Sequence record: NC_048792.1
Strand: one strand, 5' to 3'
DNA length: 64,000 nucleotides
The notes under the pieces are model-generated. The model made no database searches, was not told where the DNA came from, and worked only from the letters and a program-made list of their open reading frames with translations. The translations under genes were made by a program, and so were the position numbers. Position 1 is the stretch's first letter; each line of letters opens with the position of its first letter. Shown here in pieces: positions 2,248-57,970 of this stretch.

Positions 2248-3240
2248 ATGTCTGTTATGAACTTTGAGAAATTTGTTACCCGTGAAAAGAATCGTTATTC
2301 TGTTTACAAGCTTCATGAAATGTACGTCATGAAAGATAACGATGAAATTATCTCGGTGCTACGTAAAGATCGCCCTCTGGATTCAGAAACAGAGATCGTC
2401 GTTATTACTGAGCGCGGTGAGTCGGGTATCTGGTATCTGGGCTTGCAGTCCGGCAACATGAATAACCGTAAGGAGATTAAACGTCTCCTGAAAAGAAATG
2501 CACCTAAGGGCGTTAAGTTTGAGTTCTTCGAAAAGATCCGCTTCAAAATCGACGGCAATCAACGCTTCCTGACATCTGCGGGCAATCGTATCGCAGAAGG
2601 GGCAATGAACGAAGACTTCAACAACTGGCGTGGGCCGTTCAGTGGTCGTCAGTGGAAAGAAGATCTGGGTGGTAAATTCAAAGACTACCTGAAAGAACAG
2701 TTCGACTTGCAATGGGCTCACAAAGCCATTTGTCAGCGTCGCGGTGAATATCAATATCTACCCGACGTTGCTCTGTTCTTCGATACCACTAAAGATCTGG
2801 TACTGAAGTTGATTAAGCGTCCTAATGACAAGGATAGCTGCGAAGGCTTCTACGTCGGTACGCTCTATGGTAAACCATTCGGTTACCACATAGACGGTAA
2901 CCAACCCAAGATCACTCAGATCGACGATTACGTCCGTCGGTCGGTTGCTGACATCACGCAGACTCCAATCGAATCTGTCGAACTCGAAGGCGAACGCTTC
3001 GCTACGGATGTTAACTACGATCGCGTTGCTGACCGCTGGATCCTCAACTCTACGATCGGCGAGATTGGTCACTTGGTCAAAGGGGTTCGTCCTGATAACA
3101 CTTGTGATATTCGCAAGCACGTTAAATGGACATACCGCGTTAACGGATTTGCTCTCAACGAAATTCCATTGTTGGAACCGTTGTTGGTAGAAAGTTTCCT
3201 TCGTGGTTACCATCGCCTTATTCAGCACACCACCGTCTAA
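2248..3240 (+). CDS. Hypothetical protein
   Basis: 330-aa ORF with GAGGAG RBS, downstream of an early promoter. No motif recognised. Confidence 0.75.
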   Translation: MSVMNFEKFVTREKNRYSVYKLHEMYVMKDNDEIISVLRKDRPLDSETEIVVITERGESGIWYLGLQSGNMNNRKEIKRLLKRNAPKGVKFEFFEKIRFKIDGNQRFLTSAGNRIAEGAMNEDFNNWRGPFSGRQWKEDLGGKFKDYLKEQFDLQWAHKAICQRRGEYQYLPDVALFFDTTKDLVLKLIKRPNDKDSCEGFYVGTLYGKPFGYHIDGNQPKITQIDDYVRRSVADITQTPIESVELEGERFATDVNYDRVADRWILNSTIGEIGHLVKGVRPDNTCDIRKHVKWTYRVNGFALNEIPLLEPLLVESFLRGYHRLIQHTTV

Positions 3241-56350: not shown

Positions 56351-56435
56351 GGTAGGTTACTCAAGCGGCAACGAGAACAGACTGTAAATCTGTCGCCTTC
56401 GGGCTTCGATGGTTCGAGTCCATCACCTACCACCA
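56351..56435 (+). tRNA. trnY: tRNA-Tyr (GTA)
   Basis: Acceptor GGTAGGT/ACCTACC, anticodon arm ACAGA-CTGTAAA-TCTGT, long variable arm, GTTCGAGTC T-loop, and encoded CCA. Confidence 0.95.
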
Positions 56436-56443
56436 AATCAATG

Positions 56444-56521
56444 AACCGAGTAGCTCAACTGAATAGAGCACCGTCCCGCTAAGACGGCCGTTGGAGGTTC
56501 AAATCCTTCCTCAGGTTCCCA
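56444..56521 (+). tRNA. Atypical tRNA, anticodon GCT (nominally Ser) on a short-variable-arm body
   Basis: D arm GCTC/GAGC, anticodon arm CCGTC-CCGCTAA-GACGG, T arm GGAGG-TTCAAAT-CCTTC, and CCA. It has C33 and a bulged A in the acceptor stem. Confidence 0.7.
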
Positions 56522-56822
56522 AACAAAGCCCGAAGACGTTCGGGTAAAGTCGTCCCATTTAATTCCCTACTACTTAAGTTACGGTAGATACAGTTAATTG
56601 GGGTGCGATAACAATGACACTTGTCCCCCAAAGCCCTGGGTACTGCACCCAGAAAAAGAGGACTGGCAGCCAATACATAGCGACCAATGGTTAGCTAGAG
56701 CAGCCTTTATAACTCCGTGAAATTCGGAGGAGTGTCTCCCATGATGTCCTCATTGTAGAGGGAGGTTGATTGTAGTCAACCTGTTGTGAAACGAATCTGC
56801 AGTGAGGACTTCTTAACGTTTT

Positions 56823-56910
56823 ATCGAGATAGTCTACTTAAACCTAGTGAGGAATTCGACGGCGGATACGTCCGTAAGACTACGTAGGTTCGATCCCTAC
56901 TCTCGATCTA
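56823..56910 (+). ncRNA. tRNA-like RNA 1 (acceptor and T arm, no anticodon arm)
   Basis: ATCGAGA/TCTCGAT, GTAGG-TTCGATC-CCTAC, and central stem TAGTCT/AGACTA. Confidence 0.6.
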
Positions 56911-57217
56911 GTTAATAGACATCCTAAGAGATCGGTGAAATGACTGCTACTAATCATAGCGGTCTGCCCCCGTTACTACCTGAGAACGGAAGATGTCTGG
57001 GGTACGATATTACACACTACGTTAATCAACCGGGGTGCAACAGGTCAGGGCTTAAACGCATACCTGAGATCCACTTACCATCTATCGGGTGTTGTGGTGT
57101 GTAATCCATTTAGCTAACATGAAGATCGCTATCTACTATTTAAGGTTTTTGATAGCCAAACCATGAGGAAGTTAAACTGATCGGTAAACAACTTCTGTTT
57201 GTCGGTTAAAAGAACAA

Positions 57218-57345
57218 TGACGCCTGCACGTAAAAAGCAGCCTGCGCCAGCTGGGCGCGGTGGGGGCTAAGTGCCAGCAACTGTTGTGGCGAGATCGCGG
57301 CAACAGCACCGGAAAGCCAGGTGCGATTCCTGGGGGCGTCACCCA
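57218..57345 (+). ncRNA. 128-nt expanded tRNA-like RNA ending in CCA
   Basis: TGACGCCT/GGGCGTCA followed by C-CCA, T arm CCAGG-TGCGATT-CCTGG, and three or four internal hairpins. Confidence 0.6.
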
Positions 57346-57347
57346 AT

Positions 57348-57424
57348 TAGGTACGTAAGTCTCAAGTGGCCGCATTCATCTGCCCGCTGCCTAAAGACTT
57401 TGTGGAATGGATTCCGCGTACCTA
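57348..57424 (+). ncRNA. tRNA-like RNA 2, same topology as 56823..56910
   Basis: TAGGTAC/GTACCTA, central stem AAGTCT/AGACTT, and T-like arm GTGGAA-TGGA-TTCCGC. Confidence 0.5.
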
Positions 57425-57460
57425 AAAACCAGTAAGTTAAACTAATAGGACGATTCTACG

Positions 57461-57970
57461 ATGACTATCCTTAATCGCGATATGATCATGCAAGAACTCT
57501 TAAACTCAATAGATCCTGATGCAGGCCCATGTCTTGGGCTTAGCAGGGAAAAAGAGTTAGCCGAAATTTATACGCTAGGATTCAAGGCACCTCGCCAAAC
57601 GGGGTCTACGTATTGGCTTATCGAAAAACTCATTGAGGATCGTAACTCAATTGTAATTTTGATTAATAGCGACTTTAAAGAACACTTCCTAGCGGATGTT
57701 GAGAAATACCCTAAAGTCATTTTCGACAAGTGTCTTAAATATGGACCATCTGTTGAACGGGGTATTCTTAATGGCGACAAAGACAATATAGTCGATCGTT
57801 GCTTCACTGCCAGGGAATTCTTAAACGCTGACCTAGAACGTCACCGCTACGCCACATCGGTCTTCTTTGATGGCGCGTCGACGATTGCTAGTAAGATTAA
57901 TCTTAATGCGTATTACCGAAAGTTGGCCAAAGAAGTAAAAGGTTATCCGGTTACTTGGCTGATTAACTAA
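57461..57970 (+). CDS. Degenerate P-loop protein with a terminase-like Walker A
   Basis: KAPRQTGSTYWL and VFFDGAS. Confidence 0.6.
   Translation: MTILNRDMIMQELLNSIDPDAGPCLGLSREKELAEIYTLGFKAPRQTGSTYWLIEKLIEDRNSIVILINSDFKEHFLADVEKYPKVIFDKCLKYGPSVERGILNGDKDNIVDRCFTAREFLNADLERHRYATSVFFDGASTIASKINLNAYYRKLAKEVKGYPVTWLIN

What the first reader, a model, noticed from the sequence alone, without database searches (positions are those of the whole stretch)
56823..57424. Two tRNA-shaped RNAs sharing a non-tRNA central AGTCT/AGACT stem
Seen: at 56823-56910 and 57348-57424 a perfect 7-bp acceptor-like helix stacks on a T-like hairpin (the first has a canonical TTCGATC loop). The D and anticodon arms are replaced by one 6-bp stem, T-AGTCT/AGACT-A in one copy and A-AGTCT/AGACT-T in the other, with a compensatory outer pair. 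The acceptor sequences are unrelated yet both pair fully, and neither encodes CCA. Known: the tmRNA tRNA-like domain and bacterial Y RNAs (YrlA) keep acceptor/T-arm mimicry without an anticodon. Inference: a new tRNA-elbow-mimic RNA family with at least two paralogs.
Basis: partly seen in the sequence, partly recalled or inferred. Interest (0 to 1): 0.7.

Follow-up and report, generated by a model that had tools for sequence, protein, structure and literature searches.

The report
New tRNA-like RNA family in phages
The first of the two RNAs (56823-56908) belongs to a conserved, unannotated small-RNA family that keeps a tRNA's acceptor stem and T arm around a non-tRNA core and sits in the tRNA gene clusters of about 87 T4-like and jumbo phages. 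The second (57348-57424) is an unrelated local hairpin structure, not its paralog.

Summary
The window is Serratia jumbo phage Moabite.

**Element 1 (TL1, 56823-56908)** is real.
- It has a perfect 7-bp acceptor helix next to a canonical T arm. That combination is expected 0.017 times per shuffled window.
- No tRNA or Rfam model accepts it.
- About 87 phage records hold a homolog: Moabitevirus, Klebsiella N1M2, Shewanella SXP01, and the T4-like Jiaodavirus, Gelderlandvirus and Moonvirus. It is always inside a tRNA cluster, is annotated as RNA in none of the listed records, is single-copy in the four whole genomes checked, and is absent from 185,579 bacterial genomes.
- Covariation is strong: 94% of cells pair against about 41% in slid controls, and 10 pairs change on both sides.
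- Acceptor sequences differ between lineages but still pair, while a roughly 24-nt internal loop is nearly invariant.

**Element 2 (TL2, 57348-57424)** is not a family member.
- Its hairpin has no T loop.
- The TL1 covariance model gives it 6.4 bits, less than real tRNAs get.
- Its sequence similarity to TL1 is at chance level (p=0.26).
- Its overall shape is as common in shuffled sequence (16 observed, 13.6 expected).
- The shared AGUCU stem covaries away in other TL1 lineages.

The closest known analogue is T4 species 1 RNA (rnaC), which is not detectably homologous. Function is unknown. The likeliest reading is a tRNA-scaffolded RNA released by tRNA-processing enzymes. Another first-stage note (s1-156815) covers the same RNA island.

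The parts
56823..56829 (+). TL1 acceptor-like stem, 5' strand (pairs with 56901-56907)
   Evidence: Read directly. Five distinct acceptor sequences occur across lineages, and four of them pair at 6-7 of 7 positions.
56830..56835 (+). TL1 central stem, 5' strand UAGUCU (pairs with 56877-56882)
   Evidence: It covaries to UAGUUG/CAACUA in JD18, S16 and CF1.
56836..56861 (+). TL1 nearly invariant internal loop (UUAAAC-N-UAGUGAGG-(N)-AAUUC-R-A-M)
   Evidence: It is invariant or nearly so in 12-16 sequences from six lineages. It may hold a 3-bp mini-hairpin CYU/AGG (inference only).
56862..56875 (+). TL1 inner hairpin GCGGA-UACG-UCCGU
   Evidence: The G-C pair becomes A-U in the T4-like members. 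The alternative register is broken by C-to-A in N1M2 and S16.
56877..56882 (+). TL1 central stem, 3' strand AGACUA
56884..56900 (+). TL1 T arm: a 5-bp stem with the canonical 7-nt loop UUCGAUC
   Evidence: Read. The stem covaries (GUAGG/CCUAC, GCAGG/CUUGC, AUAAGG/CCUUAU) and the loop stays UUCRAWY.
56901..56908 (+). TL1 acceptor 3' strand plus a discriminator-like C; no CCA is encoded
57347..57425 (+). TL2: a separate closed three-helix module (closing stem, AAGUCU/AGACUU stem-loop, 6-bp hairpin with UGGA loop). It is not a TL1 family member.
   Evidence: Fold z-score is -2.8 on both strands. It is found only in Moabitevirus. One compensatory pair is seen in Totoro. Model R1 gives it 6.4 bits.
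57218..57341 (+). It has an 8-bp acceptor-like stem, two long internal arms, a T-like arm CCAGG-UGCGAUU-CCUGG, then A-CCC.
   Evidence: Consensus fold of five relatives; one compensatory pair in the variable arm.

Best explanation
**Shown.** 56823-56908 encodes a member of a conserved phage non-coding RNA family, here called TL1, of about 86 nt.
- It has a tRNA-type acceptor helix coaxial with a canonical T arm.
- The D and anticodon arms are replaced by a 6-bp stem that carries a nearly invariant loop of about 24 nt and a short UACG-capped hairpin.
- It sits on the tRNA strand inside phage tRNA clusters, 4-16 nt from neighbouring tRNAs or tRNA-like modules.
- It was single-copy in the four whole genomes checked.
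- 57348-57424 (TL2) is a different, Moabitevirus-only structured module in the same RNA island.

**Inferred.**
- TL1 is co-transcribed with the tRNAs. Host RNase P and 3' trimming enzymes cut it out because the acceptor/T-arm minihelix looks like a tRNA, and it probably receives CCA.
- The tRNA-like half therefore acts as a processing and stability scaffold. Its sequence is free to vary as long as it pairs.
- The invariant loop is the working part. It binds a component conserved across Enterobacterales and Shewanella, rather than a phage protein or an antisense RNA target.
For: - **tRNA-likeness beyond chance:** 2 observed against 0.017 expected.
- **Not a tRNA or a known family:**
- **Distribution:** 87 phage records. 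It lies between tRNAs in JD18, CF1, N1M2 and SXP01 and directly after tRNA-Arg in S16. None of the listed records annotates it as an RNA.
- **Phage-only:** 0 hits in 185,579 bacterial genomes.
- **Covariation:** 94.1% of cells paired against 37-44% in slid controls. Ten pairs change on both sides against 0-4 in controls, and 0 of 500 shuffles reach this.
- **Selection or transfer:** Moabite shares only 65-70 detectable ORFs with N1M2 and SXP01, yet TL1 is 87% identical in DNA while its flanks are unalignable.
- **Retention:** TL1 is kept in phages that have only 2-3 tRNAs.
- **No phage partner found:** no ORF is shared by all TL1-positive genomes and absent from T4. No antisense target was found in the phage genomes or in host rRNAs, tmRNA, M1 RNA or two tRNAs.
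- **TL2 is not a member:**
Against: - There is no expression or end-mapping data. No infection RNA-seq exists, and the wastewater 'RNA' contigs are probably DNA.
- The MFE z-score of TL1 alone is unremarkable (-0.78).
- In JD18-type members the acceptor pairs at only 4-6 of 7 positions, unless a bulged longer helix (AGAC...GUCU) is allowed. RNase P processing may therefore differ there.
- The functional half of the statement (scaffold plus host-factor binding) is inference. The BLASTP profile used to exclude a phage partner is insensitive.
Confidence: 0.72

Rival explanations
1. One reading: TL1 and TL2 are two paralogs of one tRNA-elbow-mimic family defined by the shared AGUCU/AGACU central stem.
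For: Both are closed three-helix modules in one RNA island. Both have a 6-bp stem containing AGUCU/AGACU directly after the closing helix. In the relatives they lie in tandem with TL3 between them.
Against: - Model R1 scores TL2 at 6.4 bits, E 1.1, below the real tRNAs.
- There is one R1 hit per genome.
- Alignment is at chance level, p=0.26.
- TL2 has no T loop.
- The stem sequence is not conserved within the TL1 family.
- The TL2 shape occurs at chance frequency.
- TL2 is absent from N1M2, SXP01 and the T4-like phages that carry TL1.
Confidence: 0.06
2. TL1 is a decaying tRNA pseudogene with no function of its own.
For: It lies in tRNA clusters. At a very relaxed threshold ARAGORN forces a 'tRNA-Pro' cloverleaf onto it. 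Its local similarity to tRNA-Ser has p=0.011.
Against: The non-tRNA core is the most conserved part, across six lineages of very distant phages. Compensatory changes maintain all four helices. It is retained where almost all tRNAs have been lost.
Confidence: 0.05
3. TL1 mimics the tmRNA tRNA-like domain and acts through SmpB or the ribosome.
For: The loop contains GGAAUUCGACGG, which resembles the tmRNA 5' GGAUUCGACGG just before a helix leading to the T arm.
Against: - No Rfam tmRNA hit appears even at E=10, and ARAGORN finds no credible tmRNA.
- Alignment to E. coli tmRNA is at chance level, p 0.14-0.64.
- There is no G3-U70 pair.
- The 'GAC' that would correspond to the tmRNA motif covaries as part of the central stem.
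Confidence: 0.04
4. The conservation reflects a DNA-level element (a recombination or homing-endonuclease site at cassette borders), not an RNA.
For: A Moabite-specific 297-bp insertion starts exactly after TL1's last base. Nuclease genes are inserted in these tRNA islands, for example HNH in Totoro and segB in T4.
Against: Base changes are compensatory in the RNA-helix sense, including G-U pairs that work on one strand only. The orientation always matches that of the tRNAs.
Confidence: 0.03

Closest known systems
Phage T4 species 1 RNA (rnaC) and species 2 RNA (rnaD)
   Same: These are small stable RNAs in the phage tRNA cluster, on the tRNA strand and a few nucleotides from tRNA-Arg. rnaC also has an acceptor-like helix next to a canonical T arm (CCGGG-UUCGAAU-CCCGG), with one covarying pair in Karamvirus. 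Their function is still unknown (PMC3014915, PMC12685909). In S16, TL1 occupies the position directly after tRNA-Arg.
   Different: There is no detectable homology. R1 gives rnaC 10.6 bits from the T arm alone and finds nothing else in T4. rnaC is 139 nt, has tandem U-U mismatches in its acceptor and has a different core. BLAST finds rnaC in 751 records and TL1 in 87.
tmRNA tRNA-like domain
   Same: It has an acceptor stem and T arm without an anticodon arm, and a GGAUUCGAC-like motif.
   Different: TL1 has no tag reading frame, no alanine identity pair, no Rfam or ARAGORN match, and only chance-level similarity.
Bacterial Y RNA YrlA (RF02553)
   Same: It is a tRNA-like module embedded in a non-coding RNA.
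   Different: The only YrlA hit in the region (22.6 bits against a gathering score of 69) falls on the two real tRNAs, not on TL1. TL1 has no Ro-binding helix.
Canonical tRNA (RF00005)
   Same: It shares the 7-bp acceptor stem, 5-bp T stem, UUCRANY T loop, tRNA-operon context and short spacers.
   Different: TL1 has no D arm, no anticodon arm and no 7-nt anticodon loop. It is not called by ARAGORN or Rfam.
Engineered tRNA scaffolds and eukaryotic mascRNA-type tRNA-like RNAs (own knowledge)
   Same: A tRNA-like fold is used so that tRNA-processing enzymes release and stabilise an unrelated RNA.
   Different: Those are artificial or eukaryotic. Here the idea is only an inferred mechanism.

Membership tests
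Canonical tRNA (Rfam RF00005 / ARAGORN) | Cloverleaf with D arm and anticodon arm scoring above threshold | tested here: not met
   ARAGORN calls only Tyr and Ser. Rfam at gathering score and at E<=10 has no tRNA hit on TL1, TL2 or TL3. Only -ps60 forces a call.
Canonical tRNA (Rfam RF00005 / ARAGORN) | 7-bp acceptor stacked on a 5-bp T stem with a T-loop consensus | tested here: met
   Met for TL1 only. TL2 has a 4-nt loop.
tmRNA tRNA-like domain | Match to tmRNA models, a tag ORF, and a G3-U70 pair | tested here: not met
   The TL1 acceptor has C3-G70.
YrlA (RF02553) | Rfam model at gathering score | tested here: not met
   The 22.6-bit hit (gathering score 69) lies on tRNA-Tyr/Ser, and there is none on TL1.
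T4 rnaC / rnaD | Sequence and structure homology to T4 species 1 or 2 RNA | tested here: not met
   R1 against T4 gives 10.6 bits from the T arm only, and the whole-genome search has no hit.
T4 rnaC / rnaD | Non-tRNA stable RNA gene inside the phage tRNA cluster with a tRNA-like 3' half | tested here: met
   Context. rnaC's T arm and acceptor. The stability of TL1 RNA itself was not tested.
TL1 family (model R1), membership of TL2 | Significant score to the family covariance model | tested here: not met
   6.4 bits, E 1.1 with filters off. There is no second hit in the Moabite genome.
TL1 family (model R1), membership of 56823-56908 | Significant score, and covariation over all four helices | tested here: met
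   85 bits, E 1e-16. For covariation.

The most novel reading that the evidence does not exclude
TL1 is a tRNA-shaped decoy or adaptor RNA. Unrelated lytic phages pass it around in their tRNA islands to neutralise a conserved host factor that recognises the tRNA acceptor/T-arm elbow. That factor could be a tRNA-targeting immune nuclease or an acceptor-end-modifying toxin. The invariant loop would be the inhibitory or binding surface. T4 rnaC would then be a functional analogue, which would finally give the 50-year-old 'species 1 RNA' a role.
Probability: 0.2. Interest if true: 0.85.

Novelty: new variant of a known kind. Interest (0 to 1): 0.6.

Why it matters
Phage tRNA clusters are now seen as counter-defence islands, for example against Septu and PARIS-type tRNA nucleases (PMC13096335). 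T4's two tRNA-cluster RNAs have had no known function since the 1970s (PMC3014915).

TL1 is a second, independent tRNA-like family. It is covariation-supported and shared at 75-87% nucleotide identity by phages that otherwise share almost no genes. This gives a comparative handle on that question.

TL1 also adds an unannotated gene to about 87 genomes, many of them Klebsiella and Salmonella phages, and gives Rfam a candidate family. In Moabite it shows that the annotated small ORFs in this stretch are probably RNA genes instead.

Tried and rejected
- **Cloverleaf refolds:** relaxed ARAGORN runs, including intron and tmRNA modes, gave only sub-threshold or inconsistent calls.
- **Rfam:** searches at E<=10 on short slices gave only noise.
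- **tmRNA resemblance:** at chance level.
- **Antisense targets of the invariant loop:**
  - None other than TL1 itself in the Moabite, JD18 and S16 genomes at up to 3 mismatches.
  - No duplex better than shuffles with E. coli 16S, 23S, 5S, tmRNA, M1 RNA, tRNA-Ile or tRNA-Ala.
- **Phage protein co-occurring with TL1:** six-frame ORFs of Moabite were compared by BLASTP with JD18, S16, N1M2, SXP01 and T4. No ORF is shared by all TL1-positive genomes and absent from T4.
- **More divergent members:**
  - A degenerate structure-aware pattern in IMG/VR found nothing new.
  - A metagenome scan gave only JD18-like copies and one chance hit.
  - R1 found nothing in RB69, RB49, KVP40, RB43 or phiKZ.
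- **Expression data:** no infection RNA-seq exists. Wastewater contigs only revealed one more variant, placed right after a tRNA 3' end.
- **Sigma-70 promoter and terminator scan:** uninformative.
- **Complex prediction:** not run, because no partner hypothesis survived the sequence tests.

Full report
**Identity of the window.** The window is Serratia phage Moabite (MK994515, 273,933 bp, Moabitevirus), and window coordinates equal genome coordinates. The finding lies in an ORF-poor stretch downstream of the only two tRNA genes of this genome. These are tRNA-Tyr at 56351-56435 and tRNA-Ser at 56443-56521, both on the + strand.

**The observation.**
- TL1 (56823-56908) has a perfect 7-bp terminal helix. 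A 5-bp stem with the loop UUCGAUC sits directly next to its 3' strand. A 6-bp stem UAGUCU/AGACUA starts right after the 5' strand.
- TL2 (57348-57424) has a 7-9-bp terminal helix, a 6-bp stem AAGUCU/AGACUU, and a 6-bp hairpin whose loop is only UGGA.

Chance expectations for the two differ by three orders of magnitude.
- The strict tRNA-type combination (perfect 7 bp, adjacent 5-bp stem, T-loop consensus) occurs twice in the window, in tRNA-Tyr and TL1. It occurs 0.017 times per dinucleotide shuffle.
- The loose shape that TL2 meets occurs 16 times, against 13.6 in shuffles.

**TL1 is not a tRNA or a known RNA family.**
- ARAGORN and Rfam, at gathering score and at E<=10 on short slices, do not call it.
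- Only at a very relaxed ARAGORN threshold is a cloverleaf forced onto it.
- No ORF of 40 aa or more overlaps it on either strand.

**TL1 has many homologs, always in tRNA clusters.** BLAST finds it in 87 phage records.
- Hosts and lineages:
  - the Moabitevirus group at 98-100% identity;
  - Klebsiella jumbo phage N1M2 and Shewanella jumbo phage SXP01 at 87%;
  - T4-like phages of Klebsiella (Jiaodavirus, e.g. JD18), Salmonella and Escherichia (Gelderlandvirus, e.g. S16), Citrobacter (Moonvirus CF1) and Enterobacter, at 75-83%.
- Annotation: none of the listed records annotates it as an RNA. In S16 a hypothetical ORF is drawn over it.
- Position: it lies between tRNA-Asn and tRNA-Arg in N1M2, between Ser and Cys in SXP01, between Leu and Thr in JD18, between Gln and Met in CF1, and 4-5 nt after tRNA-Arg in S16. 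It is always on the tRNA strand.
- Other collections:
  - A pattern scan of 185,579 bacterial genomes found none.
  - IMG/VR and metagenome scans found only further phage copies.
  - One wastewater contig holds another variant directly after a tRNA 3' CCA.

**Structure by covariation.** I built a covariance model (R1) and aligned 16 hits (15 distinct sequences) to it.
- 94.1% of cells form standard pairs, against 37-44% when partners are slid by 1-3 columns.
- Ten pairs change on both sides, against 0-4 in the slid controls. None of 500 shuffles reaches the observed values.
- My per-lineage parse shows the following.
  - Acceptor: AUCGAGA, AUCGGGA, AAUUGAA and AGUAGAA pair at 6-7 of 7 positions with their partners. 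CCGGGAA pairs at only 4-6 of 7.
  - Central stem: it switches from UAGUCU/AGACUA to UAGUUG/CAACUA.
  - T stem: it takes three forms.
  - Inner hairpin: it switches from CGGA/UCCG to CAGA/UCUG around a UACG loop. The alternative register is broken by a C-to-A change in N1M2 and S16.
- The internal loop (UUAAAC-N-UAGUGAGG-(N)-AAUUC-R-A-M) is nearly invariant.
- In JD18-type members the acceptor is imperfect unless a longer bulged helix (AGAC...GUCU) is allowed.

**Selection.** Moabite shares only 65-70 BLASTP-detectable ORFs with N1M2 or SXP01 and about 8 with JD18 or S16. Yet TL1 is 87% identical to the N1M2 and SXP01 copies at the DNA level while its flanks cannot be aligned. TL1 is kept in phages that retain just 2-3 tRNAs: Moabite, S16, N1M2 and SXP01. 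This points to strong constraint, cassette transfer between tRNA islands, or both.

**TL2 is not a paralog.**
- R1 with filters off gives TL2 6.4 bits (E 1.1 in 1.3 kb), less than the real tRNAs get (12.6 and 9.8 bits).
- A whole-genome search finds one TL1 per genome.
- Local alignment of TL1 and TL2 is no better than shuffles, p=0.26.
- The shared AGUCU is not a family feature, because it covaries in other lineages.
- TL2 is restricted to the ten Moabitevirus records.
- TL2 is probably still a real structured RNA.
  - Its fold z-score is -2.8, although this holds on both strands.
  - Totoro carries one compensatory G-C to A-U change inside it.
  - A 14-nt duplication in BUCT660 and a 1-nt deletion in 2050HW (the latter inside TL3) break the ORFs annotated across this stretch.
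  - In the relatives, TL1, a third tRNA-like module (TL3, 57218-57341) and TL2 stand in tandem, separated by about 16 and 6 nt, like genes of a tRNA operon.

**Mechanism.**
- Shown: the fold, its conservation and its tRNA-operon context.
- Inferred from established tRNA biology:
  - RNase P and 3' exonucleases recognise the acceptor/T-arm stack, and the CCA-adding enzyme completes tRNAs that lack encoded CCA, as known for T4 tRNAs. On that basis TL1 is released from the tRNA precursor and stabilised by its tRNA-like half.
  - Because that half varies freely while the loop does not, the loop is the effector.
- What the tests of the loop's binding partner showed:
  - There is no antisense match elsewhere in three TL1-bearing phage genomes.
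  - There is no above-chance duplex with host rRNAs, tmRNA, RNase P RNA or two tRNAs.
  - No phage ORF co-occurs with TL1.
  - A conserved host protein or complex is therefore the most likely partner, but this is unproven.

**Comparison with known systems.**
- The closest precedent is T4 species 1 RNA (rnaC).
  - It lies next to tRNA-Arg.
  - It has an acceptor-like helix with tandem U-U mismatches next to a canonical T arm. One pair covaries in Karamvirus.
  - Its function is still unknown (PMC3014915; PMC12685909).
  - R1 detects only its T arm, at 10.6 bits, and T4 has no TL1.
  - TL1 is therefore an analogue, not a detectable homolog.
- R1 also finds nothing in RB69, RB49, KVP40, RB43 or phiKZ, so the distribution is patchy.
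- The tmRNA-like motif GGAAUUCGACGG is at chance level and no tmRNA model matches.
- YrlA matches only the real tRNAs, and weakly.

**Verdict.** The novelty level is a new variant of a known kind: tRNA-like stable RNAs in phage tRNA clusters. Function remains open. The most exciting reading that the evidence allows is a decoy against tRNA-directed host immunity (see PMC13096335 for such defences), at about 20%.

Noticed in passing
window 57218-57341: A third tRNA-like module (TL3). It has an 8-bp acceptor-like helix, two long internal arms (one variable with a compensatory change in 2050HW), and a T-like arm CCAGG-UGCGAUU-CCUGG. It is followed by A-CCC and lies 6 nt upstream of TL2. It is found only in Moabitevirus.
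   Followed up: partly
window 56909-57205: A 297-bp stretch present only in Moabite and Yaphecito starts exactly after TL1's last base. It contains a closed module (about 57012-57109, closing helix ATTACACAC/GTGTGTAAT). The homolog of this module in Klebsiella phage N1M2 lies upstream of TL1 and shows two compensatory pairs. RNA modules therefore seem to move as cassettes.
   Followed up: partly
window 56703-56814: Two more conserved hairpins lie upstream of TL1: about 56712-56730 (CUCCG.../...CGGAG, with two compensatory pairs in relatives) and a long one at 56741-56814.
   Followed up: partly
window 56598-56720, 56940-57104, 57172-57375(-): The annotated small ORFs CPT_Moabite_078, 079 and 080 have no Pfam or PHROG match and overlap the structured RNA modules. 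The stretch holding 079 is absent from the relatives. The frame of 080 is broken by a 1-nt deletion in 2050HW and a 14-nt duplication in BUCT660. They are probably not genes.
   Followed up: partly
L005 (Haymo) 1550-1629; L007 (Totoro) 1635-2240; L006 (Kodama) 1634-1743: The slot holding tRNA-Tyr in Moabite holds tRNA-Asn in Haymo and an HNH nuclease gene in Totoro. In Kodama about 100 extra bases lie between the Tyr and Ser genes. The tRNA island is a hot spot of replacement.
   Followed up: no
L004 (BUCT660) about 2236-2249: A 14-nt tandem duplication (CCGCATTCATCTGC) lies inside the TL2 inner arm.
   Followed up: no
L011 (T4) 2909-3047(-) and homologs L033, L034: T4 rnaC has a tRNA-like 3' half. 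Its acceptor-like helix carries two conserved U-U mismatches and one A-U to G-C covariation in Karamvirus phages. EnC15 replaces the middle of rnaC but keeps both ends.
   Followed up: partly
whole Moabite genome (L043-L056): Only two tRNA genes are found in 274 kb. Only about 65-70 ORFs are detectably shared with the jumbo phages N1M2 and SXP01, which carry the same TL1.
   Followed up: partly
window 57461-57970: The 169-aa gene directly downstream of TL2 matches only PHROG 2586 (unknown function) and is conserved in all Moabitevirus relatives.
   Followed up: no
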